Source: Fonticula alba ATCC 38817 (lineage: Eukaryota; Protista; Nucleariida). From it: DNA of 36,304 nucleotides. The notes below the pieces were generated by a model. That model saw only the letters and a list, made by a program, of their open reading frames with translations. It ran no database searches and was not told the origin of the DNA. Of this stretch, positions 4,115 to 29,316 are shown piece after piece. A program made the translations under genes and the position numbers. Location: the NCBI GenBank assembly GCA_000388065.2, contig KB932217.1, one strand, 5' to 3'. Each line of letters starts with the position of its first letter. The stretch's first letter is position 1.

Positions 4115-7100
4115 ATGACCCCCGACGCCAGCAGGCAGGGCAGCAGGACGCCGGCGGCACCGCCGGCCCTGCTGCTGAGCCTGGGGCCGCTGCTGTTGCT
4201 GGCGGCCCTGCTCGGCGGGGGGGCGGCCCCCGCGCGGGGGCAGGCCCCCACGTCGGATGTCTTCCTGCACGCCACCTGGCATGCGGGGTTCAGGCCGGAG
4301 TCGTTCGGGCCGGCGGTCACCCTGCCCGGGGCGCCGTCCTACCTGGTGGACAACTACCTGCAGAATGGCAACATGTACGTGCAGAATACCTCGCTGAAGG
4401 AGGTGGAGGAGGTCCGCTTCGGCGGGCACTTCACGCGGTATTGGGGCTTCGCCCCGCGGACGACCATCCCGGCCGGGGTGACCCCCCGGTGGATGGGGCT
4501 GGCGCTGGCCGGGCACGACCGCCCGGTGGGGGTCCTGCACTCGGACCAGTGGGCCGTGCTCTTCACCGAGAGGGACCAGCGACACTTCCCGGTGAAGCCG
4601 GTGAGCCTGCTGGCCGGCCGGGCGGTGGCCGCCAACCGGGTGGACCTGCTGGGGCTGGTGGAGCCGCCGGCCGGGCCGCGGGAGGTCCACCTGTGGGAGC
4701 TGACCGAGGCCAGCCTGCTGCGGGTGCCCTTCGGCGTGCCGGTGGCCGGGGGCGAGTCGGCCCACGCGTGCCCCGGGCCCGGCCGGGCATTCTACCTGTC
4801 GGTGGGGCAGACCCTGCAGCATGTGAGCCATGCGGGGGTGGCCGGCGGCCCGGCCAGCGTCCAGGCCATCCCCCTGCCGGCGGGTATGGGGGCCATCCGG
4901 CAGCTGGCCGTCACGCGGCTGGTGGCCGATGCCGGCCACTGCCCCGGGGCCGGGGATGTGGTGCTCCTGCTGGACAGCGACCAGGTGCATGTGATCCCGT
5001 GTGCGGGGGCCGCGGCGCCGGCCGCCGGGCTGCCCTTCACGGCGTCGCTGCCGGCCGCGGCGTCGGCCGCCACCGGGCGCCTGGTCGTCCCGCCGGAGGC
5101 CGCGGCCCTGGACCAGGCGTATGGCTTCCTGTACTTCCTGCAGCCGGGCCCGGGCCCGGCCGGGGCGCCGATGCAGCTGTGGCGGGCCGGGGTCCAGGCC
5201 GGCGGGCTTGCCTGGCGGCGGCTGGTCCTGCCCCCCGGGCACGCGGCGCCCGGGCACCTGCAGCTGGTTCGCCTGCGGCTGAACCGGGCCCAGGACCAGG
5301 TCGGCGAGTGGGCCCTCATGGCCGACAAGGACCTGCTGCTGGAGTCCGAGCGCTTTGGCTGCGACACCGATGGCAGCATCGTGTGTGACGGCCCGGCCGG
5401 GGTGACCGGCTCCGCGCGGGGGTGGGCCTGCGCCCCGGGCCGGGTGCTGTCGCCGTTCGTGGCCCCGGGGCAACTGTGCGCCGACTGCGCCGAAGAGCAC
5501 TACCTCGACCGGCCGGAAGGTGCGCATGGCCCGGCGCGCGGGGCGGGGATGAGGGGGGGCGGGGCGGGGATGAGGGGGGGCGGGGCGGCCGGAGGGGGGC
5601 GGGACCGCTCTGCCGTTCATCGGTGCTGGTGTTCTGGCCGGAGGGGCGGGACCGCTCTGCCGTTCAGCGGTGCTGGTGTTCTGGCCGCAGGGGGGCGGGG
5701 CCGCTCTGCCGTTCAGCGGTGCTGGTGTTCTGGCCGCAGGGAGGGACCGCTTTGCCGTTCATCGGTGCTGACGCTCTGGCCGGGGGGCACACCTTGGCCG
5801 ACAGCCGAGCCGCCCTTCTCCGCGCCCGGCCACACGTGCCGGCCCTGCGCCGACAGCATGTGCCAAGTGTGCGATGCCCATGATTGCCTGGTGTGCAAGG
5901 GGGCGCTGCTGCTGCAGCCGACCGGCCCGGGCGGCGGCATGGCCTGCGTGGGGGCCTGCTCCGGGGGCTTCACCCGGCAGGGGGGTGTCTGCCTGCCGGC
6001 GGCCACGCGCCTGGACGTGGCCCACATGGCGGCCGCCGGGGGGGAGGTCCTGCCGGGGCCGGTGTCGGCGGCCGAGGTGACCGGCATCGGGGCCACCCGG
6101 CTCGGGGTGGACCCGGCCACCGGGCTGCCGGTCATCCCGCCGGTGGGCACCGAGCCGCGGAATGTCCTGCTCTTTGCCGGGGCCGGGGCCGACCCGGTGG
6201 TCATGCGGCTGGAGGACATCGGCCGGCCGGGGAAGCCGGCCCCGGTGCCGGTGCGGCTCTTCACCGCGACCCCCGGGCCGCAGGTGCTGGCCATGACGGA
6301 GCTCGGGCCGATGCTGGACTCGGCCGGCCAGCTGGTCATGGGGATCGTGGTCATGCAGGAGTCCGGCTGGGTGATGGTCACCTGGCTGTCGTGCCAGCCG
6401 CCGGCCCCGGGGGAGGGGTGCACCGTGGCCGGGCCCGGGACGCCGGGCTTCTTCACGTCGCACATGCTGCCGCTGGCCCAGCGCCTGGGCGAGCGCCACT
6501 TCATGCTGATGGACGACTACCTGATGACGTCGATTATTCAGGCGGACCCGGACGCCCGGACGCTGGACTACAATTGGCACCAGGCGTCGGATGTGCTGCC
6601 GGTGCCCGGCGAGTGGGTGGTGCAGGTGCTGGGCAAGAACCATGTCGGGGTCGGGCCCTTGGACTTGGTGGCCCGGGATGACCCGCGGTGGTGGTGGACC
6701 GCCGGCGGGGAGGCCCTGCTGCCGGCGGCCAGCTGGCCGGACGACCAGTACCGGGCGGTTCTCCTCCCCCGGGGCCCGGAGGGGGCCCCCGGCCCGGGGC
6801 CGGAGCTGGTCCTGGTGGAGGACACCGCGGCCCATGCGTGGGATGTCGTCCGGATGCCGGGGAGCCTGGCGCCGGTGGCCGGCACCCGGACGCACGGCGG
6901 GCGGACCGTGCGACAGAGGCTCGGCATGCTGCCGGACCGGCCGCGGCTGGGGGCCGAGGATGCGCCGGACGCGCGGGTCTTCGGGGTCCGGCTGGCCGGC
7001 GGGTCGGCCGAGTACCCGAGCGCCCTGGTGCTGCTGTCGCGCAAGTATGTGGCCGTGTCGGTGCTGTGGTGCCGGCCTGGCGGCCGGGCCGCGGCGTGCG

Positions 7101-7702
7101 TCCTGCTGCCGGCGGTCCGGGCCGACCTGCCGGTGGAGCTCCGACTCCCGAGCACCGGGCCCCTGTGGGCGGAGCCGGTGGTCCACACGCCGGCCGGCCC
7201 GTCGGCCCATGCCCCGGGGCTGCTGGTCAGTGTGCTGACCTACGCCAAGACCATGGGGCCGGTGTATGTGCGGCTGCGGGCCACCTGCCCGCCGGGCACC
7301 GTCGGCCTGGGGTGCCGGGCGTGCGACGCCGGGTGCGCCGAGTGCTGGGCCCCGGCCGACCCGGCGGCCTGCACGGCCTGCCCGCCGGGGCACTTCCTGG
7401 CGGCCGAGGGGGGCACCTGCGCGGGCACCTGCGCGGCCGGCACCATGCCCGGGTCCGGGCCCGACGCCGGGGCATGTGTGCCCTGCCCGCCGGGGACCGC
7501 CGGCCCGGGCTGCCAGCCATGCCACCCGACGTGCATGCTGTGCTCGGCCCCGGGGGATCCGGCGGCCTGCACCGGCTGCCCGCCCGGCCGGCTGATGACC
7601 CCCGGGGGCGCTTGCATGGAGCTGTGCACCGGCGGCACCATGCCCGGGTTCGGAGCCAGCGAGGGCAGCTGCGTGCCCTGCCCGGCCAGCTGCCTCGCCT
7701 AG
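4115..7702 (+). CDS. Paralog A: secreted Cys-rich protein (signal peptide, two unassigned beta-rich domains, furin-like Cys repeats), ~1100 aa; exons 4115-5519, 5805-7702; no TM, no kinase
   Basis: ATG in CACCATG context; hydrophobic leader LLLSLGPLLLLAALLGGGAAPARG|Q. Donor AAG|GTGCGC at 5520; branch GCTGAC 5767-5772; acceptor GACAG at 5804. The phase-1 join YLDRPE|AEPPF matches paralogs B and C. CxxCxxxCxxC repeats from 7286; TAG at 7700-7702. Confidence 0.88.
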   Translation: MTPDASRQGSRTPAAPPALLLSLGPLLLLAALLGGGAAPARGQAPTSDVFLHATWHAGFRPESFGPAVTLPGAPSYLVDNYLQNGNMYVQNTSLKEVEEVRFGGHFTRYWGFAPRTTIPAGVTPRWMGLALAGHDRPVGVLHSDQWAVLFTERDQRHFPVKPVSLLAGRAVAANRVDLLGLVEPPAGPREVHLWELTEASLLRVPFGVPVAGGESAHACPGPGRAFYLSVGQTLQHVSHAGVAGGPASVQAIPLPAGMGAIRQLAVTRLVADAGHCPGAGDVVLLLDSDQVHVIPCAGAAAPAAGLPFTASLPAAASAATGRLVVPPEAAALDQAYGFLYFLQPGPGPAGAPMQLWRAGVQAGGLAWRRLVLPPGHAAPGHLQLVRLRLNRAQDQVGEWALMADKDLLLESERFGCDTDGSIVCDGPAGVTGSARGWACAPGRVLSPFVAPGQLCADCAEEHYLDRPEGAHGPARGAGMRGGGAGMRGGGAAGGGRDRSAVHRCWCSGRRGGTALPFSGAGVLAAGGRGRSAVQRCWCSGRREGPLCRSSVLTLWPGGTPWPTAEPPFSAPGHTCRPCADSMCQVCDAHDCLVCKGALLLQPTGPGGGMACVGACSGGFTRQGGVCLPAATRLDVAHMAAAGGEVLPGPVSAAEVTGIGATRLGVDPATGLPVIPPVGTEPRNVLLFAGAGADPVVMRLEDIGRPGKPAPVPVRLFTATPGPQVLAMTELGPMLDSAGQLVMGIVVMQESGWVMVTWLSCQPPAPGEGCTVAGPGTPGFFTSHMLPLAQRLGERHFMLMDDYLMTSIIQADPDARTLDYNWHQASDVLPVPGEWVVQVLGKNHVGVGPLDLVARDDPRWWWTAGGEALLPAASWPDDQYRAVLLPRGPEGAPGPGPELVLVEDTAAHAWDVVRMPGSLAPVAGTRTHGGRTVRQRLGMLPDRPRLGAEDAPDARVFGVRLAGGSAEYPSALVLLSRKYVAVSVLWCRPGGRAAACVLLPAVRADLPVELRLPSTGPLWAEPVVHTPAGPSAHAPGLLVSVLTYAKTMGPVYVRLRATCPPGTVGLGCRACDAGCAECWAPADPAACTACPPGHFLAAEGGTCAGTCAAGTMPGSGPDAGACVPCPPGTAGPGCQPCHPTCMLCSAPGDPAACTGCPPGRLMTPGGACMELCTGGTMPGFGASEGSCVPCPASCLA
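5520..5804 (+). other. Spliceosomal intron of paralog A (285 nt, phase 1, in-frame and stop-free)
   Basis: GT...AG with a CTGAC branch site. Its translation is repetitive and absent from paralogs B and C, which splice at the same codon. Confidence 0.85.
5597..5785 (+). repeat. Four tandem 46-49 bp units (consensus GGGACCGCTCTGCCGTTCAGCGGTGCTGGTGTTCTGGCCGCAG), preceded by a 2x 21-bp G-rich unit at ~5540-5585
   Basis: Unit anchors at 5604, 5651, 5700 and 5746, read directly. Confidence 0.9.
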
Positions 7703-7795: not shown

Positions 7796-7816
7796 GAGAG
7801 AGAGAGAGAGAGAGAG
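7796..7816. repeat. (GA)n microsatellite
   Basis: Direct reading. Confidence 0.95.
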
Positions 7817-8849
7817 CGAGAACCGTGGGTGCCTTTTGGCTGGCTGTGACCGGGGCGCCGCGGGCCGCCGGAAAGGATGCCGATCCAGCGGGCCCGTGCC
7901 CCACGCCAGGGGGATATGTGGCCACAGGCGGTAGCATGCTGTGGCCGAGCTCGGCGTGTGGTGGCGGCGTGCGGGGGGCATTTCCCGCGCACACGGTGCG
8001 CAGCGGGCACCCCCAGCCAGCCGACGGCCCCCTGCCCGAGAGCGAGAGTGCGCCGCCCGCCGCGCCGGGCCCTGTGGAGTGGCAATAAAACAGGGCGCAA
8101 AAAAAGCGGCAGAGAGGAAGTGCATGCCGGCAAGGCGCCGCCCGCGGGCCCGGATCCGGCGCTGCAAGAAAAAGGCACCACGGGCACGCTTCCCGGCTGG
8201 GAGGCTGGGAGGGGAGGAGGGGTCACAACCGGGCTGGATGGGTGGTGCGGAGGGGGATCCGAGGCGCGGGGTGCGCACACGGGCGGGGCGCGGCCCTCTC
8301 GACGCGCTGGCACGCGTCGGCAGCGTGGCCCAATGTGTCGGGCCGGGGGGGCCCGATCGGGAGTCAGGCGCCGCCAGCGGCGGGTCACATGCGGCCATTG
8401 TGGGGCTGGCTTGGGCGGTGCTTGTGGGTGGCTCGCATGCCCGGCGCCTGCGGGGAGCGATACGCCCGGGGGGGGGGGCCGGCCAGGGGCCGGAGCTTGG
8501 CCGGTGATTTTTGAGTGGTTTTTGGGCGCCAGGTGTGCGCCGGCCATGGGGCCCGGGGGAAAGGGGAATGTCAACTGCGGTGCTCTTCGCACGGGTTTCC
8601 ACACAGGGAGGGAGCTCTGTGACAGAGGGGCGAGCACAAGGTGGAACAACCAAAGGAGCAAGCCATCGTGTTTATTTCCTCGGCACAGGTGGCGCATGCA
8701 CGCATGAGCGAGGGGAGAGGAGCAACCGGGAGGGGACCCGGGCCACGGCCAGGGCGATCTCCCAATGACCTGCCATCCGGAGGGGCACGTTTGTCACGCG
8801 CCCGTGGCCGAAGAGAGGGAGGCGGCAGCCGGCTGGAGGGTGACATTGG

Positions 8850-10727
8850 TCATGATGTGGGGGAAGCACAGCCATCTACCGTCTGGCCGAGGAGCAGGTT
8901 TACCCGGACCGCCCAGCGGCCATCCAGGGCCACCCTGCAATGATCCAGGTCCAGGGGGGCATCGGCCGTCGGGCAGAGGCGGCCCCCTGGGGAGGGGAGG
9001 CGCAGGGCAAAGGCAAAGGCGGCCCGCTTGGACCGGCCACCGCCGAAGGGGTACTCATGGCAGACGAGGAAATCCTCATGGAGCGAGAGAGCCCGCCGGC
9101 CGTGGATCATCAGGCGCTGGGGGTTGATCAGGTTCTCAAAGTCCGGTCCCTGAAGGCAGGGGGGTGAGGAAGGAGGGGCGATCAGGAGAGGGAGCAGAGA
9201 GCGGAGAGGGGGCAGAGAGTGGAGAGGTCAGAGAGGTCAGAGGTCAGAGAGGTCAGAGAGGTCAGAGAGGTCAGAGAGGTCAGAGAGGTCAGAGAGCAAA
9301 GAGAGCAGAGAGCAAAGATAGCAAAGAGAGCAGAGAGCAGAGAGAGGGAGAGAGAGAGAGAGAGAGAGACAAGGTGGGGCTTCGGTCAGGGACCAGAAAC
9401 ACGGTGTGCTAGCGCGCAGAGGCGCCAGGGGAAAGAGCGGCCGGGCAGCGCGCCACGCACATGATAGGCCTCCGGCTTGCAGGCCTCCCGGAAGACCGTG
9501 GCAGTTCCCTTGCGGGGATTGCAGAACACGGTTAGCGGGCCGCCGGCAGGCAGGTTCCGGAAGGGCGAGGCAAGTGACGAGGGAGGGACCGACTCCGGGA
9601 CATCGAAGCGAAAGACGTCGCCATTCATGAAGGACCGGGCTGCCACATCATCCTCGAAGAGGGGCAGGGGGATCTGAATGAAAAAAATGCGGCGGCGGGG
9701 AGTTTCGGGGATCGCGCGCAGAGCAGGGACACCGGCGTGAGTGGAGTGGAAGCAGCAGAGCGCCCCCCTGGCGGCCGGATTCAAAGCCTGCGCGCGGGGA
9801 GAAGCCCAGAGGGCGGCACACGGCCAGGCGCCCAAATGGGCCACGGGAAGGAAGAACAGGGACAAAGGGGGGTCACGTACATGGGCCAGGTCCAGGGGCT
9901 GGGCTGTCGACTGGGCGAGGTTGACCAGGTACCCGGAACGCGTGGCCGAGTCCACCAGCAGGGCCTCGCCAGGGGTGGTGGTCATTTGAAAGGTGGCGCC
10001 CGGGCGGATGCCCCGCTTGAGGATGGTCCCCGTGAGCAGGGCGAGCGGAGCATCCGGCCCCCCGGCGCCCAGCGGGCGGGACCAGTCCACCAGCAAGAGG
10101 CAGCCATTGACGATGACGACCAGGAGCCGGTGGCCATGGGCCGCGAGCATGGCACACGACCGGGCCCCGGCCAGCTGGCATGCCCTGGTGCAGGCGGGCG
10201 TGATGCCTGCCGGGCGGGGGTCTCCCTGCCACCGGTGCCGAGCGAAGGCGCGGATCTTGGTGGTGGTGCTCGGGTGAATGCCAAGACACTGCATGCAGTG
10301 GCTCACCGACGACACCACCGCCATGGTGGAGCCATGCGGGCCTTGGCCCAGGCGGTGGAATGCGAAGTCCACCTGCATGGTGCCCATGTCAATGCGCACC
10401 GTGCCGCGGTGAACGGAAAGGCAACCGACCAGGTCCCTGTCGGTGGTCAGCTGGCGACGATCTTTTCGTTAGCGAACAGTGCGCCCGCCTCCCGGAGCAA
10501 GGGGTGAAGGGCAAAGCAGATGAAGGCAGCACAGCGAGCGGGCGCGCTTGATGTTCCCTGACCAGGGCCACGAGCCAGTCGCCCGGGGAAGCCACTCGCC
10601 CGGGGGGGTAGGCATGGTCATCTGCAGGGGGCCGTGACACACAGGCACACAGGTGGGCCCGGCGGGGATGCGCACACGCCTGGAGCGCACGGCGGAATGG
10701 CGCCGGTGCATGCGCCTCGCCCGACAT
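8850..10727 (-). CDS. Spliced hypothetical protein, ~470-485 aa; exons (minus) ~10727-10563 (tentative), 10450-9461, 9149-8850
   Basis: Long protein-like frame (LAAHGHRLLVVIVNGCLLLVDWSRP...). Donor CAT|GTGCGT at 9460 and acceptor CTTCAG at 9150 join in phase 0 (EAYH|GPDFENLINPQRLMIHG); TGA at 8852-8850. Upstream branch GCTAAC ~10470 and acceptor GCCAG at 10451; donor CTG|GTCAGG at 10562 and ATG at 10727 fit the phase. A further 54-nt in-frame intron (10675-10622) is possible, so the 5' end is uncertain. No family recognised. Confidence 0.7.
9222..9295 (-). repeat. 8x 9-bp tandem repeat (GAGAGGTCA on plus = TGACCTCTC on minus) inside the 311-nt intron 9150-9460, within a long purine (plus) / pyrimidine (minus) tract ~9185-9370
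   Basis: GGTCA at 9226, 9235, 9242, 9251, 9260, 9269, 9278 and 9287. Confidence 0.92.
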
Positions 10728-12760: not shown

Positions 12761-12873
12761 GCCCGCGCCCCCGCACACCCCGCCTCCGACGCCGCCGCCG
12801 CCGCCGCGCCCGCTGCCTGCCACACGCGCCCTGCTGTGCAGCACCGACCCCGAGCATATACCACCGCCTGGAC

Positions 12874-15800
12874 ATGGCGGTCGGCAGTGCCCTCGGCCTG
12901 GTGGCCGGCCTGCTGGCATGGATGCTGACCATGCCGGTGGAGCTGGCCCGCGGCCAGATGCCCCCGCCCTCGGGGCTGCCGAACATCTACCTCCACCGGT
13001 CCATGGGGTCCCTCATGCGGGGCACGGGCCGGGTGGATGTGGTCACCGCGCCGGGGCAGGCCTCGGTGACGTTCAAGCTGAATGGCCCGACAACGATGGA
13101 GATCTACGACCAGCGGGACGCGCTGGACATCCTGCCGGACTACCGGGTCGGGTCCTTCTTCGGGCCGGTGCCGCGAGAGACGCTGGAGTGCCCGCGAAGT
13201 GGCGTCGACCCGGCCAGCACCAGCATCATGGCTTTGCCGGTGACCGGGAGCCCGACCCCGGCCCTGGTGCAGCATACCGACCAGTGGGTGGCGCTGTTTG
13301 AGTCGCCGATGGAACACCCGCTGCCGGGGCCGGCCACGCAACTGCTGCGCGGCCTGGCCGCGGCCGTGGACGATGTGGACCTGGTCGGGGTGACGGACAT
13401 CCCGGGCCAGTCGCGGCAGGGGGAGCTGTTCCTCGGCCGGCTGACGTCGGCCGGGCTGGCCGTGCGGCCGGTCGGCATGACGGTGGCCCTGCCGGTGCTC
13501 ACGGCCACCGGGACCCGGCGGCACTTCTACGTGGCCGAGTCGGACGCCCTGCACAGCATCGCCCTGCAGGAGGACGGCACGGCCGTGGTGGATACCATGC
13601 TGCTGTCGGACACCGTCATCAGCATGGTGACCACGCGGCTGGTGTCGACGGTGGCCCAGTGCCCGGACCATGCGGACGTGGTGCTGGCCACGGCCGACGG
13701 CCGGCTGAGGGTCTTCCCCTGCCACGGGGGCAGCCAGCCCGGGCCCGAGCTCGAGGGCGAGGTGCCGGAGTGGCAGCTCTGGGTGCAGGACAGCCTGGTG
13801 GCCGTGGGGCCGGCCTCGCTGGACCAACTGTCCGGGTTCTTCCTCTACCAGTCCCCCGGGCAGGATGGCTTCGACCGGCCATACGTTTGGCGGGTGAGCG
13901 TCAGCCCGGATGGGGGGGACCTGCTCTGGCAGTGGATGGTCATCAGCGGCGGCACCGAGGTGAGACGGAATGCGCTGGGCAAGTTCCGGACATCGGAGAC
14001 CGGGCTCTCGGACTGGCTGATGGTGAGCTACAACCAGGTGTACTTCGACTCGGCCACCTTTCAGTGCTCCACCGATGAGAGCATCATTTGCGACGGGCCG
14101 AGCTACACCGACACATTCGGGGCCTTCGACTGCATCGAGGGCCATGGCGTGTCGTACTTTGCCCGGCCCGACCAGATATGCGGTGGCTGTGGCCCTCGCT
14201 GGTATTTGGACCGTCCGCCAGGTGCGCGCTGTCCCCCGGGGGGGGGGGGGAGCTGCTGGACGTGTGTGTGTGTGTGTGCCCGGCTCGGCGTGGGTCTGGC
14301 GGCTGAGGGATGCTAACGAGCGAGACACGGTGTGGCGCGTCGTCGACGGGCCGACCCCGGGGGCCGGCTCGGGCGCCGGGGCGGGGGTGCTGCACGAAAA
14401 AACACACATACGGAAAAAAAAAACCAGGCGAGCCGCCATTCAGCCAGCCCGAGCACGAGTGCAAGCGCTGCGACGAGGACAGCTGCTGGACCTGCAATCG
14501 CCAGGGCTGCCTGGTGTGCGATAGTACACGGATTCCGGAGTACAGCGGCCCCGGCGGCCGGGTGGTCTGCCGGCAGGGCGGCTGCTCGCCGGGGTTCCAC
14601 CTGGTGGCCGGGGTGTGCCAGGCCGAAGGGCCGGCCCTGCCGGTCATGCGCATCAGCCCGCCGGAGGTGGAGACCCTGCCCGGGCTGGACCCGGGCATCC
14701 CGGTGACGGCGCTGGCGGCCACGCGGCTGACCGTGGACCCGGTGTCCGGGGGGCCGGTGGTACCGGCGGTCGGAGGCACCGGGACCGACCCGGGCATGGT
14801 GCTCCTGCTGCAGGCCGGGCCCCAGGCCCGGGCATGGCTCATGCCCAATGGGGCCATCGGCCAGCCGGGCAAGGCCCCGCTGCAGCCGGTGGCCCTCCTG
14901 AGCGGCCCGCTGCCGGCGGATGTGGTGGCCGTGGCCGAGGTCGGGCCCTTCCTGGAGGATGGCGGCCAGCTGCTGCTGGGGCTGGCGCTGTGCGACCGCC
15001 AGGGCACCGTGTATGAGGCGTGGCTGGAGTGCACGTCCGGGCAGGCGGACGGGTCGGCGCCATGTGCGGCCGCCGGCGGCCCGGCCGTCCTGACGCCCCT
15101 GCTGCAGGGCACCGGCTGTGTGGACCTCCAGGTCCAGGCGACCACCGGCCGGCATGTGGTCATGCTGTCGGACCAGGCCCAGGGGGCGGCCCTGCTGGAG
15201 GCCGATCCGGCCGGCCGGCGGCTGCTGGCCACCCGGGTGCCGATGGATGGCATGGTGGTGCTGCCGGGGCCCGGGGGCCCGGATGGCCGCGTGGCCGACC
15301 CGGCCGTGGGCGACTGGCTGGTGGGCACCAGCGCCGGGGACCTGCCCTCGGCCATGCCCACGCGCTTGCCGGTGTGGGATTCCCGGTGGAGCTACCTGGT
15401 GGGCCGGTTCATTCGGGGCGTTGCCACCTGGCCGGATGTGCTGGTGCCGGTGGTCCTGCCGGCCGGCGGGGGCTTCCCGCTGGAGCTGGTGTTCGTGTCC
15501 ACGAAGGAGGACCAGTGGCGGGTGGTTCGCGCGCCGGGCGAAATGCAGCCCACCGGCGCGACCATGTGGCTGGCATCCAGCATGCAGGTTTTGATGGAGA
15601 CCCTGCCCCTGCCGGTGCCGCAGCTGCCGGTCAGCACGCTGAATGTCCGGGCCCAGGGGCTGCACATCCCCGGGTCGGCCACATACCCGAGTGCCTTGCT
15701 GCTGCAGGCGCACACCATGCTCGGGGTGTCGCTGCTCCGGTGCCCGGGCGACCGGGTCCTGTGCAGCTTCCTGCCGGCCGTGGTGCTGGAGCTGCCGGCG

Positions 15801-16643
15801 GCATTCCAGGTGCCCTCCGACAAGCGGCTTTGGCAGGTGGCCATCCCGCGGGCAGGTGGCCCGGCTCCCGGGCCCGGGGCCGAGGGCACCGTGCCGGTCG
15901 TCTCGCTGCTGGGCTTTTCCGAGGCCACCGGGCCGGTGCATGTGCGCCTGGGGGCCGACTGCCCGGCCGGCACCTTCGGGCCGGCCTGCGAGCCATGCCA
16001 CCCGGACTGCCAGCAGGCGTGCACCGGCCCCGGGCCCGGGGATTGCGTCTGCGCCTTCTGGCTGCCGGAGGACCCGGCCGTGTGTCTGGCGGCCTGCCCG
16101 GCCGGGACCTACAGCGACTGGGGCGCCTGCCGGGGCTGCCATGCGTCGTGCGCCGAGTGCACCGGGCCCGAGGCCGGGGCGTGCACCGCATGCGCGCCGG
16201 GGCTCGTGCTGGAGGATGGCCACTGTGTGGTGGCCTGTGGGGCCGGGGAGTATGCGTGTGCCTCCGCGTGCCTGCCCTGCCCGGGAGAGTGCGCCAGCTG
16301 CGAGGCGGCCAGCGGCAGCGGCCCGGGCTGCGAGGCCGTGTGCACCGGCTGCAAGCCGGGCTTTGTCCTGGTGGGCGACGAGTGTGTGGCGGAGGTCTGC
16401 CCGGTGGGGGAGTTCCTGCCGCCGGGCTCGGACACGTGCGCCCAGTGCCACTGCACCTGCCGGGCATGCGCCGGCGGCGCCGAGCCCGACAAGTGCACCT
16501 CCTGTCCGAAGGGCTTCCACCTGTCGGAGGAGGGCCGGTGCCGGGTGTCCTGCCTGCCGGGGGGCCTGTGCCCCGGCCGCGTGGCCGAGGTGCTGCTGGT
16601 GCATCTACTTTGCTGGGCTCGGAAGTTCGGCGGCGGCCACTGA
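12874..16643 (+). CDS. Paralog B: secreted Cys-rich protein, same architecture as A, ~1187 aa; exons 12874-14221, 14428-16643; no convincing TM, no kinase
   Basis: Leader MAVGSALGLVAGLLAWMLTMPVELARG|Q. Donor CAG|GTGCGC at 14222; branch GCTAAC 14312-14317; acceptor ACCAG at 14427. The phase-1 join YLDRPP|GEPPF aligns with A and C. Furin-like repeats from 15960; TGA at 16641-16643. Confidence 0.88.
14222..14427 (+). other. Spliceosomal intron of paralog B (206 nt, phase 1)
   Basis: GT...AG; the frame switch between ORFs 12874 and 14310 is resolved exactly by this intron. Confidence 0.88.
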
Positions 16644-20160: not shown

Positions 20161-20228
20161 TGTCTCTCTCCCTCTCTCTCCCTCTCTCTCCCTCTCTCTC
20201 CCTCCCTCCCTCCTTCCCTGTCTCTCTC
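20161..20228. repeat. CT-rich tract built from (CCTCTCTCTC)n
   Basis: Direct reading. Confidence 0.9.

Positions 20229-22439: not shown

Positions 22440-22440
<1 letters not shown>

Positions 22441-22479
<39 letters not shown>
22441..22479. repeat. (CA)n microsatellite upstream of paralog C
   Basis: Direct reading. Confidence 0.95.
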
Positions 22480-22480
<1 letters not shown>

Positions 22481-22817
22481 GGCCGCTCGTTGCGGCCTGC
22501 CCGAAGCGCGGGCCGGACGTTGCCTCCGGGCGCGGCGGCGGCGGCGGCCAGGCCGGGACCCCGGGACTGCACCGGCCCCCAGGCGTGTGCCTCCTTCCGT
22601 GGCCTCGCACAGGGGCGGGACCCCCAAGAGGCCCCTGTGAATGGGGCCCCCCTCGGCGGCCGGCCGGCGCGGGTCGAGGCACACCCCCGACTCTCCCCTC
22701 CCCCGCGCTTGTCTGTCCTCACCTGCTCGGTTCCGCCCGCTGCCTGCGTGACCCCTCTCCGCCCCAACCTCTCTCTCTCCCCCCCCCCTCCCCCCCTTCC
22801 CGAGCCCCCATCGAGTC

Positions 22818-25800
22818 ATGGCCGGTTTGCCGGCACTGGCCCAGTGGCCGGCCTTGGCCGCGGTGCTCCTGGTGCTCGGCATGCTGGCATGCTCGCGCGC
22901 GCAGGACATCCACCTCCATGCCGCGCGGCAGCCGATCCTGAGCAGGCCCGAGCCGGTGTCCCTCATTTTGGCGCCCGGTGGCGACATGTTTGCCATGGTC
23001 CGCGAGAGTAATGTAGCCTTCTGGTTTGGCATGCTCGTCGATGCGGGCTTCTACATGAGGGAGCACCGGTGGGGCTTGTACTTGCTGGACCACGGCCTGG
23101 GCCTTACCTCGGGGGATCCCAACAACCCCGGCACCGCGGCCATCATGGTCCCCCGGGGGTTCAGCCCGTACCATGGCAACCTCCTGGAGCACACCCTCGA
23201 TGGGGTGGGCTTCTTCGGGGACCCGCCCCCCTATGCGTTTCGCTTGCCGGGCGTCCGGCTGCTGGCCGGATCGTCCAGCCTACTTAGCGCGAACTTCCTC
23301 GGGCTGAGGCAGGACCCCGGCCCGGGGCAGGTGGTGTACCTGGGGGCGCTTGACATCCTCATGGTCGAGGACATCGAACACAACATGCCCCCGGTGGTGG
23401 GGAATGCCCTGGCCATTGCGGCCTCCCGGGGGGCGTTCTTCCTGATCGACGACATGCACCTGCAGCATGTGTCCTTCATCGGCCAGGGCCCGGCCACGGT
23501 CAAGCACATCGCCAGCCCGGGCAGGGCGCTCCAGCTGGAGGTGGCGGTCTTCCCCGAGGCGCTGGCCGAATGCCCGAGCGTGGACGAGGCGGTGCTGGTG
23601 CTGCTGGACACCGGCCGGGTGTGGGTGTGCACCTGCTTTGGCAGCCCCGAGCAGCGGATCATCCCCGGCGGGGACCTGCCGGCCGGGGTGCCGGTGGCCG
23701 GGGCCCGGCTGATCACCCTCCCGACCGGCAGCCCGACAGGCATCCGGCCGCCGGTGTACCTGTCGGCCGCCGGGGCGAGTGACGCGCGCAACCGGCTCTG
23801 GCAGGTGACCCTGGTCCATGGGGCGGTCCAGTGGCGCCGGGTGGTTCTCCCCCCGGCGGTGGCCCATGTGTCCGGCATGCAGCTGGCCCTCAGCAGGACG
23901 GCATACGGCCGGGCCCACTGGGTCTTGGCCGACGCCGAAATGCGGGTTCTCTTCGACGCCGATGCCTTCCACTGTGCCACCGACTCGAGCATTGTCTGCG
24001 ACCGGGAGGGGCTGTCCACCGGGTCGCCTCTCGGGTGGACCTGCGTCGCGGGTCACGTCGAGGCGCCGCTGGTGTCGGAGACGGTCCTGTGCGCCGGGTG
24101 CGCCGAGGGCCACTATCTACACCGGCCTGATGGTATGTGTTTTCGTGTTTTCGTGTTTTCGTGTTTTCGTGCTTGCGTGTATGCGTAGCTGTGTGTGTGC
24201 GCGTAGCTGTGTGCGCGTAGCTGTGTGCGCGTAGCTGTGTGCGCGTAGCTGTGTGCGCGTAGCTGTGTGCGCGTAGCTGTGTGCGCGTAGCTGTGTGTGT
24301 GTGTCTCTCTGGGGCTATTTGTGCCTGTGGGTGTGTATCTTTGTGTGTGTGCTCGCGTGTTCAAGGCACCTCGACAGGCTTTTGTCTGGCTCTTCTCTCG
24401 CCCCAGTCGGCCAGGCAACTGACCCGCGGAGGACATCGCCCCAGGGGAGGCGCCCTTTGCCCAGCCGGAGCACGAGTGCCGGCCATGCGCGCAGGCGGGC
24501 TGCCGGACGTGCGACCAGGACCACTGTCTGGTGTGCGCGGAGGGCATGCTGCTGGAGCCGAGCGGCCCGGCCGGCCGGACCGTCTGCGTGGCGTCCTGCT
24601 CGGCCGGCTTCCGGCCGGTGTCCGGCATGTGCCTTCCGAGCGGTGGCACCCTGCCGGGCATCGGCCTGACGGTGCCGGTGGCGGCCAGTCTCCTGGCCGG
24701 GCTGGGCCCCGGCGACCGGGTCACCGCCATCGGCCCGACGTGGCTGTCGGTGGACGCGGCCTCCGGCGTGGCCATCCTGCCGGCCAGCGCCAGCGGCCCG
24801 GCCACGGGGGTGCTCCTTTTCACGGAGCACCTCAAGTCCTACATCCTGCCGGCCGAGGCCGTCGGGGCCCCGGGGGCGCATGCGGCGGCGGAGGTCCGCC
24901 TGCTGAGCGAGGACCTCGCCAGCCCGGTGGTGGGCTTCGTCGACGCCGGGTCCTCCCGTCGGGATGGGCAGCTCTTCCATGGCCTGGTCATGGTGGGCCG
25001 GGATGGCCAGGCCCAGCTGGCCAGGCTGACGTGCCCGGGCTCGGGGGCATGCCATGCCGGCGAGCTGGACTCGCCGAAGTTCCTGCTCGACAACTGCTCC
25101 AACAGGGTTCGGCGGTTGGGCCATTTGGCGATCGCCCTAGACCGGCCCCGGGAAGGGGTCCTGGTGGTGTACCTGAGTGGCCTGCTGGACCGTTGGTCGG
25201 TGCATGCCTTCTCCGCCGCCGAGCTGGTGGTGCTCGATATGTATGACAGGGTCCGGCGCGCCGAAAGCCACACTGGCACCTGGATGCTGCTGCCGACCGA
25301 GGCCGGCAATGCCAGCCTCTCGCCGGATTCGGCTTTCGGGGCGTACCCGGCGGGCTTGCCGCCGTTAGCCGGGCGCTTCTTGGCCGACTCGCTGGCGCCC
25401 GGCCGGGGCTTTGTGCCGGTGATGCTGGCCCGCGGGCCCGGGGCCCGGGTGTCGGGGGAGCTGCTCTTCACCGGGACCGTCGGCACGGCGTGGCATGTGG
25501 TCCATGTGCCCGGGGACATGGTGCCGGCCGGGCGATCGACCGGCCTGCCCTCCAGCCGCCATGCCATCGGCACCTTCCCCCGGGCATTGGAGCCCCCGGC
25601 CGGGGGGGGGGGCGCACCACGATGCCCTGTTCCAGGCGGTGGCCCTGCCGGCTGGCGGCCCGCGGTACCCCAGCGCGCTGCTGCTGCTGTCGCGCACGTT
25701 CGTCGGGCTGTCGGTGCTCCACTGCCCGGGCGGGCCGGCCGGGGCGTGCGCCCTGCTGCCGGCGGTCTTTGCGGACCTGCCGGCGGAGCTGCGGCCGCCG

Positions 25801-28800
25801 GCCGGCACGGCCCTCTGGACCCCGGCGGCGGTGGATTTCGCGCCGGCCGGCGGTGTGTCCGCGCGGTCGCCCGGCTCGGGGTGGCAGATCGATTTCCTGA
25901 CCATCGCGCCGGCCACCGGGCCGGTGGCCTTTTCGCTGGTGCTCAGCTGCCCGGCCGGGTCATATGGGCCCATGTGCGATGGGTGCCATCCCACGTGCGC
26001 GGCCTGCGCCAGCCCGGAAGAGCCGGAGCACTGCACCGCATGCGCCCCCGGCCGGGCGTGGCTCCATGGCCGGACGTGCGTGAGCGAGTGCCCGGCCGGC
26101 ATGTGGCCCGATGGACCGGCGTGCCGGGCCTGCCCGGGCGAGTGTGCGACCTGCACCTCGGCCGCCGCCTGCACCGGGTGCGTGGCCGGGCGCTTCCTGT
26201 CGGGCACGCACGCGTGCGAGCCGTGCGACGGGTCGTGTGCCCGGTGCACCGACGACCGGAGCTGTGACGCTTGCCGGCCGGGGTTGGTCTTTGCCGGGGT
26301 CGACCCGGGGGTGCCCTCGCGCTGCACGTTGGCCTGCCCGCCGGGCGAGTTCGCCGGGCCCGCCAGGTGCACTTCGTGCGGGCCTTCCTGCGACCTGTGC
26401 GCCGGCGGGGCGGCATCGTGCACCGTGTGCGCCGAGGGCTTCCGCTGGGCGAGCCAGCCGGGCCCCGGGGGCGCTGGCCCGTGCGTGCCCTGCGACCCGG
26501 GGTGTGTGTCCTGCACGGCGGACCGGTGCCTGGTCTGTGGGCAGGGGCTGCTTCTTGGGCCGGATGGGGCATGTGTGGGCTCCTGCCCGGACGGGTGGTG
26601 GCCCAACGGCGAGTCGTGCCAGCCGTGCGATGTCAGCTGCGGGACCTGCTCCGGCGGCGATGCCGCGCAGTGCACCGGGTGCGGGACCGGGCTGGATCTC
26701 GTGGCGGCCGGCCCCGGCGCGGTGGGGGCCTGTGTGTCCGGCTGCCCGGAGGGCGAGTACCGGGACCTTGGGTCGATGGCGTGCCGGGCCTGCGACGCGG
26801 CGTGCGCCACGTGCAACGGCCCGACCGATCGGGACTGCTGGCGGTGCAGGGAGGCCCTGCTGCAGGATGGCGACTGCGTGCAGGCCTGCGCCGCCCGGCA
26901 TGTGGCCCTTGCCGGGCGGTGCCTGCCCTGCCATGTGTCGTGCGACGCGTGTGCCGGGACCCGGAGCACCGAGTGCCTGGAGTGCGCCGACGACCTGCTG
27001 GGCCTGCCGGCCGGGCAGGCGCCGGCCCGGTGTGTGCCCGCCTGCCCGGCCGGGTACAGCCCCTCGGCCGGCGGGTGCGCCGCCTGCCCGGCCCACTGCG
27101 CCAGCTGCCCGGGGCTGAGCACCGTGTGCGGCCTGTGCCAGCGGGGGTGGCTGCTGGCCCGGCCGGACTGCGTGCAAAGCTGCCCGGAGGGAACCTCGTC
27201 GCTGGGCAGCGAGTGCTTCTCTTGCCACGAGGGCTGCGGCAGCTGCTTTGGGCCGGGGCCCGACCAGTGCCTGTCCTGCCCTGGGCAGGGGCTGGTCCTG
27301 GTGGCCGGCCGCTGCCTGGCCGACTGCCCGGCCGGCATGTTCCCGGACCGGGGCACCTGCACCCCCTGCAGCGACACGTGCGCCGCGTGCACCGGGCCCA
27401 CGGACAGCGAGTGCACCCGCTGCACCGGGGATAGGGCGCTGCTGCGGGGCACCTGCCGGGCCGGCTGCCCGGGGCGCTTTTTCCCCGCGGACAATGTGTG
27501 CCTTCCGTGCGGGGCCCGTTGCGCCAGCTGCCAGGACGCGAGTGGCTGCACCGGCTGCGAGGAGGGGCTCATGCTGCGGCCGGATGGCGGCTGCGCCGCC
27601 GGCTGCCCAGCCCGGTCGGCCGAGTGCCCGGCCCGGGCCCGGTGCGTCCCCTGCTCGGGGGAGTGCGCCGCGTGCGAGGCCTTCGGCCCGGGGTGCGAGG
27701 CCTCCTGCACGCGCTGCGAGCCGGGGCATGTTCTGTCGGGCGGCGCGTGCCATGTTGCCTGCCCGGCGGGGGAGTTCCTGCCGGCCGGTGGGCACGCCTG
27801 CGAGCCGTGCTCGGCGGCGTGCCGGACATGCTTTGGCGCGGCGGGCCAGTGTACCGGCTGCAATGGTGGCCTCCTGCACCCGGGCGAGGGCATGTGCGCG
27901 TCGGCCTGCGCCGGGGCGTCGGCCCCGGTGGCCGGCGTCTGCCTGAGCTGCTTGGCCGGGTGCGAGCATTGCGAGGCCGGGCCCGGCCAGCCGGAGTGCA
28001 CGGTCCAGGCGGCTGGCCAGCTGGTCTGTCCGGAGGTTGCATCCTGTAGCCGCTGCGCCCCGGGCCGGCTGCTACTGCCGGGCCGGACGGCCTGTGTGGA
28101 GGTCTGCCCGGCCGGGCACTTCGCCGATGCGGACGGCCAGCCGGCCGTGTGCGCCCCCTGCCATGCGAGCTGCACCGATTCCTGCACCGGCCCCGAGGAG
28201 GGTGACTGTGTCTCATCCTCCAGACCCAAGTCCTCGCGCGTGGGCCTGGCCGTGGGCCTGTCGGTGGGCCTGCTGCTGCTGCTGATCCTGCTGGTACTGC
28301 TGGTGCTGTTCCTCGTGCGCCGGCGCCGCGGGCAGGCCACCGCGAAGGCGCCGGCCGACGACGAGGACGCCACCGAGCTGAACACCATTGTGGAGCTGGC
28401 CCTGCCCGGGGCCATCCTGGTGGACGTGGCGGTGGACTTCCGGCCGCTGGACGAGACCCTCGGCGCCGGGACCCAAGCGAGTGTCTACGCGGCGCAGGCG
28501 GTCGGGGCCGGGATCGTGGCCCGGCTGGGCTGCCCGGAGGTGGTGGCCGTGAAGAAGATGCGCATCGAGGCCATGCAGCCGGTGCACCATGCCCTCTTCC
28601 AGAATGAGGTGGCGCTGATGTGGCTGCTGCGCGAGCATGGCCACATCGTCCGGCTGTTCGGGTACAGCGCCCGGCCGCCGGCCATCGTGCTGGAACGCTT
28701 CGACGGTGACCTGGATACGCTGCTGCACTCGGAGGTCCCGCTGTCGGACCTGCAGCTGGCGGACATCTGCCAGCAGTGGGCCGCCGGGCTGGAGGCCATG

Positions 28801-29316
28801 CACGCGCACGGGGTGGCCCACTGCGACCTGAAGCCGGGCAATGTGTTTGTCAGCCGGACGGCCGCTTCCTGGCGGGCGGCCCTCGGGGACCTGGGCACGT
28901 CGAAGAACCTGAGCGCCGACCGGTCGTCGGCCCTGCTGAGCGCCTTCCCGGAGCTGAATGCCATGTCGGTGCCGTATGCCGGGCCGGAGGTCCTCCAAGC
29001 CTTCCGGCGGAGCGCGCCCCTGGACCGGGGGCACTTCTTCCCGGCCGATGTGTACAGCGCCTCGGTCATGCTCTACGAGTGTCTGACGCGCGCGGCCCCC
29101 TGGCCGGGCATGGATGCTGGCCAGATCACGGCCGCGGTGCTTGGAGGCTCTCGGCCGCGTGTGGCCGGCCTGCCGGGGGCCGGGCCGCTGGCGGCGGCGC
29201 GCGACCTCATCGAGGCCGGCTGGCAGGCGGAGCCCGGTCGGCGGCCTCCAGCGGCCACCGTCCGCCAGCGGTGCGCTGCGCTGTTTGTCTCGGCCAGTGG
29301 CTTGGCTCTCTCTTGA
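22818..29316 (+). CDS. Paralog C: single-pass receptor Ser/Thr (TKL-like) kinase with furin-like Cys-rich stalk, ~2061 aa if the frameshift is corrected; exons 22818-24132, 24445-29316; one extra G in the run at 25602-25612
   Basis: Leader MAGLPALAQWPALAAVLLVLGMLACSRA|Q. Donor ATG|GTATGT at 24133; branch ACTGAC ~24418; acceptor CCCAG at 24444 (YLHRPD|GEAPF). Cys repeats 25948-28210; TM 28240-28317 followed by RRRR; kinase motifs GAGTQA, VAVKK, HCDLKPGN, DLG, GPE, DVYS; TGA at 29314-29316. Spliced length is 6187 nt (3n+1), consistent with one surplus base. Confidence 0.9.
24133..24444 (+). other. Spliceosomal intron of paralog C (312 nt, phase 1)
   Basis: GTATGT...CCCAG at the same codon position as the introns of A and B. 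Confidence 0.9.
24183..24300. repeat. 8x 14-bp repeat (GCGTAGCTGTGTGC), plus 3x 9-bp TTTTCGTGT at ~24140-24168, inside the paralog C intron
   Basis: GTAGCTG at 24185, 24203, 24217, 24231, 24245, 24259, 24273 and 24287. Confidence 0.93.
25948..28210 (+). other. Furin-like / growth-factor-receptor Cys-rich repeat array (roughly 15 units)
   Basis: Recurrent CxxC(H/D)xxCxxCxGPxxxxCxxC...C...CPxG pattern. Repeat count estimated by eye. Confidence 0.85.
28240..28317 (+). other. Transmembrane helix of paralog C
   Basis: VGLAVGLSVGLLLLLILLVLLVLFLV followed by RRRR (positive-inside rule). Confidence 0.92.
28447..29290 (+). other. Protein kinase domain, Ser/Thr type (LKPxN), TKL-like, non-RD
   Basis: Gly loop at 28462, VAVK at 28543-28554, HCDLKPGN at 28819-28842, DLG at 28888-28896, GPE at 28981-28989. 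Confidence 0.93.

What the first reader, a model, noticed from the sequence alone, without database searches (positions are those of the whole stretch)
4115..29316. Cluster of three paralogous surface proteins: one receptor kinase and two kinase-less, TM-less relatives
Seen in sequence: A (4115-7702), B (12874-16643) and C (22818-29316) are co-oriented and alignable throughout. Shared motifs include the ARG|Q / SRA|Q signal cleavage, D/N-x-x-LH at the mature N-terminus, F.C.TD.SI.CD, YL.RP.|.E.PF, W.VV..PG.M, YPSAL.L and C..LPAV..(D/E)LP. Only C has a TM and a kinase. Established: plant and animal receptor families often include soluble or kinase-less relatives that act as decoys, co-receptors or ligand presenters. 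Inference: this may be a receptor plus soluble partner/decoy system for recognising prey, pathogens or kin in a protist. Ectodomain identity looks low by eye while the Cys and motif scaffold is retained, as in diversifying recognition gene families.
Basis: partly seen in the sequence, partly recalled or inferred. Interest (0 to 1): 0.85.

Follow-up and report, generated by a model that had tools for sequence, protein, structure and literature searches.

The report
Fonticula double-propeller receptor kinase gene cluster
Three neighbouring genes of the social amoeba Fonticula alba encode related surface proteins with a two-propeller head: one is a membrane receptor kinase and two are secreted kinase-less versions, all from a family of about 65-95 genes found only in this organism.

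Summary
The window is Fonticula alba scaffold KB932217.1. A (H696_06071), B (H696_06073) and C (annotated "TKL protein kinase") are co-oriented paralogues. They share one intron position and phase, and 20 of 22 head cysteines. Only C has a TM helix and a kinase (Raf-like TKL, non-RD HCDLKPGN).

New here:
- **Fold.** The unnamed ~900-aa ectodomain models confidently (pLDDT 89.8) as two beta-propellers joined by a Cys-rich linker, on a furin-like stalk.
- **Family.** At least 65 annotated proteins carry the full head. All 30 sampled hits out of 1.84 billion representatives are F. alba.
- **B is a real secreted form.** B mRNA is spliced and runs through its stop, with no join to downstream exons. 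No coding signal follows A or B.
- **Conserved ends.** The stops of A and B recur in their closest paralogues.

Caveats:
- A, B and C share only 21-35% identity in the propellers. Each has closer paralogues elsewhere, so a strict "decoy of C" is unlikely.
- Soluble forms arose repeatedly.
- B's between-strain changes look near neutral (8 synonymous, 17 nonsynonymous).
- C carries an unresolved one-base frameshift in a G11 run.

The scan had already noted this family on other DNA of this genome. No ligand or function is known.

The parts
4115..7702 (+). Gene A (H696_06071): secreted, kinase-less, TM-less family member, 1100 aa from the ATG at 4115. Exons 4115-5519 and 5805-7702. The 285-nt phase-1 intron stays in frame.
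   Evidence: GC3 periodicity is seen at 4201-5400 and 6001-7700 only. The annotated extra exon 3600-3848 lacks it. One RNA run holds 14% of the gene's sampled words.
4241..5350 (+). A, beta-propeller 1: the distal and most divergent head domain (model residues about 5-372).
   Evidence: AlphaFold2 model, pLDDT 89.8 and pTM 0.88. VIA-align Z 16-17 to seven-bladed propellers over model residues 5-387.
5351..6010 (+). A, Cys-rich linker between the two propellers (model residues about 373-495). It carries F.C.TD.SI.CD and the YL.RP|.E.PF junction, and is interrupted by intron 5520-5804.
   Evidence: Nearly invariant cysteines C374-C489 across 48 family rows. The linker is 42-50% identical among A, B and C.
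6011..7288 (+). A, beta-propeller 2 (model residues about 496-921), carrying the YPSAL.L and C..LPAV..DLP motifs.
   Evidence: Z 17-18 to Nup133, Sec12, coronin, the LGI1 EPTP domain and integrin alphaM propellers.
7289..7702 (+). A, short furin-like Cys-rich stalk (21 Cys) ending ...CVPCPASCLA*. No TM segment follows.
   Evidence: Paralogue P0002 ends at the same position (CVPCPASCLD*).
12874..16643 (+). Gene B (H696_06073, P0128): secreted, kinase-less, TM-less member, 1187 aa. Exons 12874-14221 and 14428-16643, with a 206-nt phase-1 intron.
   Evidence: RNA contigs from three runs cover 12820-16690 with no mismatch, have the intron removed at GT..AG, and read through the stop with no further joint.
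22818..29316 (+). Gene C (P0074, annotated TKL protein kinase): the full receptor, consisting of signal peptide, two propellers, a 759-aa furin-like stalk (125 Cys), TM helix and kinase. Intron 24133-24444 (312 nt, phase 1).
   Evidence: Exact RNA pieces lie at 23710-24093 and 25106-25261.
25602..25612 (+). G11 homopolymer in propeller 2 of C where the reading frame shifts by one base. The public annotation bypasses it with a 115-nt GT..AG 'intron' (25521-25635) that removes 39 residues conserved in the paralogues.
   Evidence: It is the only homopolymer of 8 or more bases inside coding sequence in this window. The DNA contigs of run X3 break at 25580-25916, so its true length is unresolved.
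28231..28332 (+). C, transmembrane helix followed by a basic stop-transfer sequence (residues 1702-1735: ...GLAVGLSVGLLLLLILLVLLVLFLVRRRRG).
   Evidence: Kyte-Doolittle mean 3.41.
28393..29316 (+). C, TKL-type Ser/Thr kinase domain. Motifs: G-loop LGAGTQASVY, VAVKK, NEV, HCDLKPGN (non-RD), DLG, GPE.
   Evidence: Pfam Pkinase E 1.3e-27. Nearest solved kinases are B-Raf and Raf-1, E about 1e-16.

Best explanation
A, B and C are three members of a large multigene family restricted to Fonticula alba. The family encodes surface and secreted proteins with this architecture: signal peptide, beta-propeller, Cys-rich linker, second beta-propeller, then a variable-length furin/EGF-like Cys-rich stalk. 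The full form adds one TM helix and a Raf-like (TKL) Ser/Thr kinase.

**Shown:** C is a full-form receptor. Its distal double-propeller head would bind an extracellular ligand and signal through the kinase (inferred). A and B lack TM and kinase, so they are released into the medium or matrix.

**Inferred:** the secreted forms most likely act as soluble binding proteins. They could modulate receptors of their own subfamilies or serve as matrix or adhesion proteins. They are unlikely to be dedicated decoys of the neighbouring C. The locus is one of many tandem arrays evolving by birth-and-death duplication, in which 3' truncation repeatedly yields secreted or TM-only variants. The ligand class (bacterial prey, self or kin cues during aggregation, or other) is unknown.
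For: **Organism and genes:**

**Paralogy, shared intron phase and Cys scaffold:**

**TM and kinase only in C:**. The kinase is closest to Raf.

**Fold:** AlphaFold2 pLDDT 89.8; two propellers with VIA-align Z 16-18. Global structural matches are only to F. alba paralogues.

**Family size and restriction**
- 69 representatives at 50% identity among 1.84e9 proteins.
- 96 annotated proteins hit the head HMM; 65 carry the full head. Of those 65, 31 have a kinase, 8 a partial kinase, 7 a TM segment only and 19 neither.
- 30 of 30 sampled hits are F. alba.

**B mRNA:** spliced, reads through its stop, no downstream joint.

**No hidden exons:** no coding periodicity after A or B.

**Conserved stops:** the A stop is shared with P0002 (dS about 0.55). 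The B stop is shared with the B' copy in L004 (79% aa identity).

**Block duplication:** an A-type gene followed by a C-type gene recurs at a second locus (L003). A/P0002 and C/P0011 are each sister pairs at 100% support.

**Selection on C:** strain SNPs are 7 synonymous to 4 nonsynonymous, and the GC3 phase follows the frameshift.

**Recurrent truncation:** at least 9 soluble/membrane state changes on the tree.
Against: - No ligand, binding or localisation data exist, and secretion is inferred from sequence only.
- B's strain differences (8 synonymous, 17 nonsynonymous) and its dN/dS against B' of 0.71 fit relaxed constraint.
- With GC3 at 0.90-0.95, long open frames arise by chance, so ORF integrity is weak evidence of function and dS is unreliable.
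- Some annotated 'kinase-less' family members are split or partial gene models (for example P0011), so the counts are approximate.
- C has an unresolved frameshift and could be a pseudogene.
- Expression of A rests on one run holding 14% of its sampled words.
Confidence: 0.72

Rival explanations
1. Dedicated receptor-decoy or co-receptor module. On this view A and/or B bind the same ligand as C, or bind C itself. They would tune C signalling, as sFlt-1, osteoprotegerin, or plant receptor-like proteins (RLPs) paired with receptor-like kinases (RLKs) do.
For: - The three genes are physically linked and co-oriented.
- An A-type gene followed by a C-type gene recurs as a duplicated block at L003.
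- B is expressed.
- Scan note s1-066044 reports another pair of a secreted paralogue next to a kinase.
Against: - The distal propeller is only 21-27% identical among A, B and C.
- Each has closer paralogues elsewhere.
- Other arrays, such as L002 and L007, hold only kinase-bearing genes.
- No B-type gene sits in the duplicated block.
- There is no co-expression or binding evidence.
Confidence: 0.13
2. A and B are decaying by-products of birth-and-death evolution. They would be truncated gene copies that are still transcribed but have no selected function. C itself may be a fresh pseudogene because of the frameshift.
For: - B strain differences are 8 synonymous to 17 nonsynonymous, close to the neutral expectation (P = 0.36 against 27% synonymous).
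- dN/dS for B against B' is 0.71.
- The G11 frameshift in C is unresolved.
- Open frames persist by chance at 75% GC.
- Soluble forms arose many times.
Against: - Stop positions are conserved between paralogues that have diverged to dS 0.18-0.55.
- There are no frameshifts over 1100-1187 codons despite 20-40% amino-acid divergence from the closest paralogues.
- 20 of 22 cysteines are retained.
- GC3 is 0.92-0.95, as in C.
- A's dN/dS (about 0.5) equals that of C's kinase domain (0.43).
- B is the best-expressed of the three genes.
- C's SNPs are mostly synonymous on both sides of the frameshift.
Confidence: 0.15

Closest known systems
Entamoeba histolytica transmembrane kinases (TMKs), with Giardia VSP-like CXXC-rich ectodomains
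   Same: A large lineage-specific protist family. Each member has a signal peptide, a CXXC / furin-like Cys-rich ectodomain (Pfam VSP hit in C), a single TM helix and a Ser/Thr-type kinase. Some members have degenerate kinases; here P0003 has HGDLSPAN and HLG. The comparison with the TMKs rests on my own knowledge.
   Different: The Fonticula proteins carry a roughly 900-aa double beta-propeller head with no Pfam family, which TMKs lack. No sequence relationship outside the generic kinase and Cys repeats was shown.
Plant receptor-like kinases (RLKs), receptor-like proteins (RLPs) and secreted ectodomain-only paralogues
   Same: TKL-group receptor Ser/Thr kinases in expanded tandem arrays. RD and non-RD members are mixed: the family has 12 HCD and 11 HRD representatives. 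Kinase-less relatives recur.
   Different: The ectodomain is propellers plus furin repeats, not LRR, LysM or lectin. The kinase is closest to Raf, and membership of the IRAK/Pelle clade was not shown. The origin is independent, in an opisthokont amoeba.
LRP5/6 and LDLR-type propeller-EGF ectodomains; Sema-PSI receptors (Met/RON, plexins)
   Same: Alternating beta-propeller and small Cys-rich modules form a ligand-binding head on a single-pass receptor. The language-model feature search points to LRP-like clusters, with scores of 0.74-0.75 only.
   Different: No YWTD or Sema match appears in the top structural hits. Scores below 0.9 are leads only. The kinase type differs, and LRPs have none.
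Dictyostelium TgrB1/TgrC1 allorecognition pair
   Same: Adjacent, co-oriented, divergent surface-protein genes in an aggregative multicellular amoeba. Here the distal domain evolves fastest: the crude dN/dS of C against C' is 0.86 for propeller 1 and 0.43 for the kinase.
   Different: The Tgr proteins have IPT/TIG ectodomains and no kinase. No polymorphism-matching or kin-recognition data exist for Fonticula. This is an analogy only, from my own knowledge.
PCSK5/6 Cys-rich domain (furin-like repeats, Pfam Furin-like_2 / GF_recep_IV)
   Same: The stalk of C aligns with the PCSK5 Cys-rich repeats at about 30% identity, E down to 1e-106.
   Different: Only the repeat module is shared. There is no protease domain here.

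Membership tests
Eukaryotic protein kinase, TKL group (C only) | Pkinase fold with the catalytic motifs: G-loop, VAIK Lys, alphaC Glu, HxD...N and DFG. | tested here: met
   Pfam Pkinase E 1.3e-27 and PK_Tyr_Ser-Thr E 2e-21. The motifs LGAGTQASVY, VAVKK, NEV, HCDLKPGN and DLG are read directly in the translation.
Eukaryotic protein kinase, TKL group (C only) | Closest relatives among classified kinases are TKL members. | tested here: inconclusive
   The best solved matches are B-Raf and Raf-1 (E 1e-16 to 1e-13), and NCBI names C a 'TKL protein kinase'. No kinome-wide phylogeny was run.
Single-pass receptor kinase (C) | N-terminal signal peptide, extracellular domain, one TM helix, cytoplasmic kinase. 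| tested here: met
   Hydrophobic N-terminus, and one TM segment at residues 1702-1735 followed by RRRR. The kinase lies C-terminal to it. Topology predictors were not available.
Secreted soluble protein (A, B) | Signal peptide present, with no TM helix and no C-terminal GPI-type hydrophobic tail. | tested here: met
   Only the N-terminal hydrophobic segments pass the threshold. A ends ...PCPASCLA. B ends ...LLCWARKFGGGH, with a short weakly hydrophobic stretch followed by charged residues. Actual secretion was not tested.
Beta-propeller ectodomain (all three) | Closed toroid of four-stranded blades. | tested here: met
   The AlphaFold2 model of the A head has pLDDT 89.8 and is all-beta. Each half aligns over 290-335 residues with seven-bladed propellers at Z 16-18. 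Blade number was not counted directly.
WD40, YWTD (LDLR), Sema or FG-GAP propeller sequence families | A significant match to the family HMM. | tested here: not met
   No Pfam family at E <= 0.01 on any head segment of A, B or C. Structural hits are spread over many unrelated propeller families with none standing out.
Furin-like / growth-factor-receptor Cys-rich repeats (stalk) | Repeated CxxC-containing units matching Pfam VSP, GF_recep_IV or Furin-like_2. | tested here: met
   In C, VSP scores E 7.9e-11 and GF_recep_IV E 1.9e-4 (below its gathering score). PCSK5 Cys-rich domains match at E down to 1e-106. Precomputed Pfam hits exist on the paralogues.
Decoy receptor of a specific signalling receptor | The soluble paralogue shares ligand specificity with, or binds, the signalling receptor. 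| not testable with these tools
   Only indirect evidence: the distal propeller is 21-27% identical between A or B and C, which argues against shared specificity.

The most novel reading that the evidence does not exclude
The F. alba-only repertoire, about 65-95 genes, would be a self-generated ligand-receptor system. Secreted head-only forms such as A and B would be the diffusible or matrix-bound ligands, or kin tags. Receptor-kinase paralogues would read them through propeller-propeller contacts. This would give an independently evolved aggregative amoeba a recognition or aggregation code, a kinase-coupled counterpart of Dictyostelium TgrB1/TgrC1. The duplicated A-type plus C-type block would be one matched pair.
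Probability: 0.1. Interest if true: 0.85.

Novelty: new variant of a known kind. Interest (0 to 1): 0.5.

Why it matters
Fonticula alba is the only aggregative multicellular lineage on the fungal side of the opisthokonts. It has no tyrosine kinases (PMC4342544). I found no paper that describes its receptor repertoire.

This locus shows that about 1% or more of its roughly 6,300 annotated genes encode one lineage-restricted family. The family joins a previously unnamed double-propeller head to a Raf-like receptor kinase, and secreted and TM-only variants are produced repeatedly.

That gives concrete candidates for how this amoeba senses prey or each other, and a new example of convergent receptor-kinase expansion alongside plants, Entamoeba and holozoan receptor tyrosine kinases.

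It also flags annotation problems that would distort any comparative kinome count:
- frameshift-bypassing pseudo-introns;
- split gene models;
- a doubtful 5' exon.

Tried and rejected
**Raw RNA-seq runs labelled 'organism B' (X24, X18).** No reads fell on C. These runs apparently do not contain Fonticula, so they could not test splicing or the frameshift.

**The G11 frameshift.**
- DNA contigs of run X3 break at 25580-25916.
- A protein-guided scan and an exact-pattern scan of JGI metagenome contigs both found nothing.
- The frameshift stays unresolved.

**Pfam.**
- Head segments gave no family.
- Ten ORFs between the genes gave no family.

**dN/dS by Nei-Gojobori.** It was computed, but it is inflated and unreliable at GC3 0.90-0.95. 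Even the kinase domain gives 0.43, so I used it only for comparisons between domains.

**AATAAA as poly(A) signal.** I considered AATAAA downstream of A (about 8085) and B (17187). I rejected it for B because RNA coverage stops before 17100.

**Whole-model Foldseek hits to DDB1, SF3B3 and CPSF160.** TM is 0.2-0.24. I read these as generic multi-propeller matches, not homology.

**ESM Atlas feature hits to LRP and ephrin-receptor-like clusters.** Scores are 0.74-0.84, below the reliable range. I kept them as an analogy only.

**A green-alga origin.** This was my first guess from the GC content. The database match rejected it.
Full report
**Identity of the window.**
The window is 64-78% GC, with a strong third-codon-position GC bias. 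A translated search with gene A returned Fonticula alba proteins.
- P0001 (H696_06071) maps at 97.6-100% identity per exon (100%, 99.8% and 97.6%).
- The contig look-up places the window on scaffold KB932217.1 of GCA_000388065.2.
- B is annotated as H696_06073 (P0128). It is identical to my spliced model.
- C is annotated as P0074, 'TKL protein kinase'.

**Gene models.**
- A: ATG at 4115, exon to 5519, a 285-nt intron, then exon 5805-7702.
- B: exons 12874-14221 and 14428-16643, with a 206-nt intron.
- C: exons 22818-24132 and 24445 onward, with a 312-nt intron.
- All three introns interrupt the same codon, after YL.RP., in phase 1. This supports common descent.
- GC3 periodicity marks coding sequence only at 4201-5400 and 6001-7700 (A), at 12901-14100 and 14401-16600 (B), and at 22801-24000 and 24601-29100 (C).
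- There is no such signal at 7800-8900, 16800-22800 or 29400-32100.
- tblastn with C and with the kinase-bearing paralogue P0003 finds no kinase or TM similarity after A or B.

**Check of the observation.**
- Identity among A, B and C is 21-27% in the first head domain, 42-50% in the Cys-rich linker, 32-35% in the second head domain and 36-43% in the stalk.
- 20 of 22 head cysteines are shared by all five proteins.
- Only C, and P0003, has a strong hydrophobic TM segment and a Pfam kinase domain.

**What the ectodomain is.**
Pfam finds nothing in the first ~950 residues of A, B or C.
- With a 48-row family alignment, AlphaFold2 gives a confident all-beta model of the A head: mean pLDDT 89.8, pTM 0.88.
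- VIA-align splits it into two propellers, model residues about 5-387 and 495-921.
- Each aligns over about 290-335 residues with seven-bladed propellers at Z 16-18. Examples are Nup133, Nup214, Sec12, coronin, the LGI1 EPTP domain, integrin alphaM and bacterial lectins. No single family stands out.
- Foldseek finds global matches (TM 0.74-0.86) only to two F. alba paralogues.
- PDB and Atlas hits are generic multi-propeller proteins.
- The two propellers are joined by a linker that holds most of the nearly invariant cysteines.
- Behind the head comes a furin-like / VSP-like Cys-rich stalk. It has 137 aa and 21 Cys in A, 226 aa and 37 Cys in B, and 759 aa and 125 Cys in C. It resembles the PCSK5 Cys-rich domain.

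**The kinase of C.**
- C carries the G-loop, VAVKK, NEV, HCDLKPGN (non-RD) and DLG motifs.
- Its nearest solved relatives are B-Raf and Raf-1, at E about 1e-16. This agrees with the database name 'TKL protein kinase'.
- Suga et al. reported that Fonticula has no tyrosine kinases (PMC4342544).
- I found no paper describing Fonticula receptor Ser/Thr kinases.

**Family size and range.**
- A profile of the head was searched against 1.84 billion representative proteins. It found 69 hits, 68 of them below E 1e-10.
- All 30 sampled hits are F. alba proteins; one representative came from a Logan assembly and clusters with an F. alba protein.
- Counting everything fetched, 96 annotated F. alba proteins hit the head HMM and 65 carry the full head.
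- Of those 65, 31 have a complete kinase, 8 a partial one, 7 a TM segment only and 19 neither. Some of the last group are split or partial gene models.
- Locus tags and look-ups show tandem arrays on several scaffolds.
- Scan notes report the same family on many other pieces of this genome.

**Are A and B truly kinase-less?**
For B the answer is yes, at the RNA level.
- Contigs from three RNA runs cover 12820-16690 without a mismatch.
- They show the 206-nt GT..AG intron removed, which proves they derive from RNA.
- They read through the stop at 16641-16643 into the 3' UTR, and they show no joint to any downstream sequence.
- B's C-terminal tail and stop recur in its closest paralogue B' (L004 / P0020), which is 79-80% identical.

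For A:
- The stop position (CVPCPASCLA*) is shared with P0002 (CVPCPASCLD*) on another scaffold, at 62% identity and dS about 0.55. The truncation therefore predates that duplication.
- One RNA run holds 14% of A's sampled words.
- No coding periodicity follows either gene.

**Relationship among the three genes.**
They are not recent tandem copies of one another.
- On the head tree, A pairs with P0002 (100% support) and C pairs with P0011 (100% support).
- B sits near P0003 with weak support.
- P0002 is followed 2.7 kb downstream by the C-like gene P0011 plus a 420-aa kinase gene. Together these are one receptor split by a frame change.
- So an A-type plus C-type block was duplicated as a unit. 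That block has no B-type gene and no intergenic similarity to the window.
- Other arrays hold only kinase-bearing genes.
- On the tree, ten soluble forms need at least 9 changes of state. Many nodes are weak, but at least about five fall in separately well-supported clades.

**Selection.**
Nei-Gojobori ratios are inflated by GC3 of 0.90-0.95, so they are useful only for comparison between domains.

| Comparison | dN/dS |
|---|---|
| C vs C', kinase | 0.43 |
| C vs C', stalk | 0.35-0.37 |
| C vs C', propeller 2 | 0.67 |
| C vs C', propeller 1 | 0.86 |
| A vs P0002 | 0.47-0.56 |
| B vs B' | 0.71 |

Differences between the assembly and a second strain seen in DNA run X3:
- In C: 7 synonymous and 4 nonsynonymous (P = 0.012 against a neutral 27% synonymous), with synonymous excess on both sides of the frameshift.
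- In B: 8 synonymous and 17 nonsynonymous, close to neutral. About half of these variants equal the B' base, which hints at gene conversion or paralogue cross-mapping.

So the distal head evolves fastest. A looks constrained. B is either diversifying or relaxed.

**The frameshift in C.**
- At the G11 run 25602-25612, the conserved frame moves by one base.
- The paralogue alignment is continuous across it, and the GC3 phase switches there.
- It is the only homopolymer of 8 or more bases inside coding sequence in the window.
- The public model hides it with a 115-nt GT..AG 'intron' (25521-25635). That removes 39 residues conserved in the family and retained in B's mRNA.
- The C' gene at L003 also changes frame at a short G run, and it was split into two gene models.
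- I judge an assembly homopolymer error more likely than a real lesion, at roughly 3:1. The available contigs break there and the metagenome scans found nothing.

**Interpretation.**
- The best-supported reading is that the window is a typical array of a Fonticula-restricted receptor family, with a double-propeller head, a furin-like stalk and a TKL kinase. In this family, secreted head-plus-short-stalk forms arise repeatedly and at least some are maintained.
- It is weakened for this particular trio by the low identity of the putative binding domains and by each gene's closer kin elsewhere.
- The ligand is unknown, as is any role in prey sensing, aggregation or kin recognition.

Noticed in passing
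window 25521-25635: The public gene model of C (P0074) uses a 115-nt GT..AG 'intron' to step over the G11 frameshift. This deletes 39 residues that are conserved in the paralogues and retained in B's mRNA. It is probably an annotation work-around rather than a real intron.
   Followed up: partly
window 3600-4114: The annotated gene A (H696_06071) starts with an extra exon (3600-3848) that shows no GC3 periodicity and would bury the signal peptide about 100 residues inside the protein. The ATG at 4115 is the more plausible start.
   Followed up: partly
window 16800-22800 (annotated genes at 19241-20094 and 20349-21500): The 6-kb stretch between B and C has no coding periodicity and no Pfam hit. 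It nevertheless carries two annotated small hypothetical genes, and short exact RNA pieces lie at 17632-17846 and 18349-18502. The gene models are doubtful, or the transcripts are non-coding.
   Followed up: partly
L003 20820-20850 (scaffold KB932209.1): The C-like paralogue next to P0002 changes frame at a short G run (gtggggcc). It is annotated as two genes: H696_05303, 1601 aa, plus a 420-aa kinase. This is a second homopolymer-linked break in a C-type receptor.
   Followed up: partly
window 14528-16592: About half of the run X3 variants in B carry the base found in the paralogue B' (L004). This suggests gene conversion between B copies, a third allele, or cross-assembly of paralogues in the contigs.
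   Followed up: partly
window 24170-24300 and 5540-5770: Intron 1 of C holds a roughly 14-nt tandem repeat (gcgtagctgtgtgc), and run X3 shows a 6-nt length difference at 24292. The in-frame intron of A holds roughly 60-nt tandem repeats.
   Followed up: no
window-wide, e.g. 32385-32410 (G26), 18330-18346 (C17), 3307-3332 (C16 then G10): Long G or C homopolymers (8-26 nt) are frequent in introns and intergenic DNA. They are absent from coding sequence except for the G11 run in C.
   Followed up: partly
window 8850-10387 (- strand) and 9220-9295: An annotated 339-aa gene on the opposite strand lies between A and B. It has no Pfam hit and only moderate periodicity. A (ggtcagaga)n minisatellite lies in or next to it, and AT skew and GC skew flip in this region.
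   Followed up: no
window 35448-35685: A run of 238 N, i.e. an assembly gap.
   Followed up: no
P0003 (scaffold KB932210.1, L002): The kinase-bearing paralogue closest to A and B has HGDLSPAN and HLG in place of HxDLKxxN and DFG/DLG. It is likely a pseudokinase receptor. It lies in a tandem array with two further receptor kinases of 2184 and 3462 aa.
   Followed up: no
runs X17-X40 ('organism B'): Run X3, one of the DNA runs under this species label, holds near-identical Fonticula sequence with about 0.2-0.7% differences, together with bacterial-looking contigs. Two raw RNA runs under the same label gave no reads on C. The label is probably not Fonticula itself, for example a co-cultured or host organism.
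   Followed up: partly
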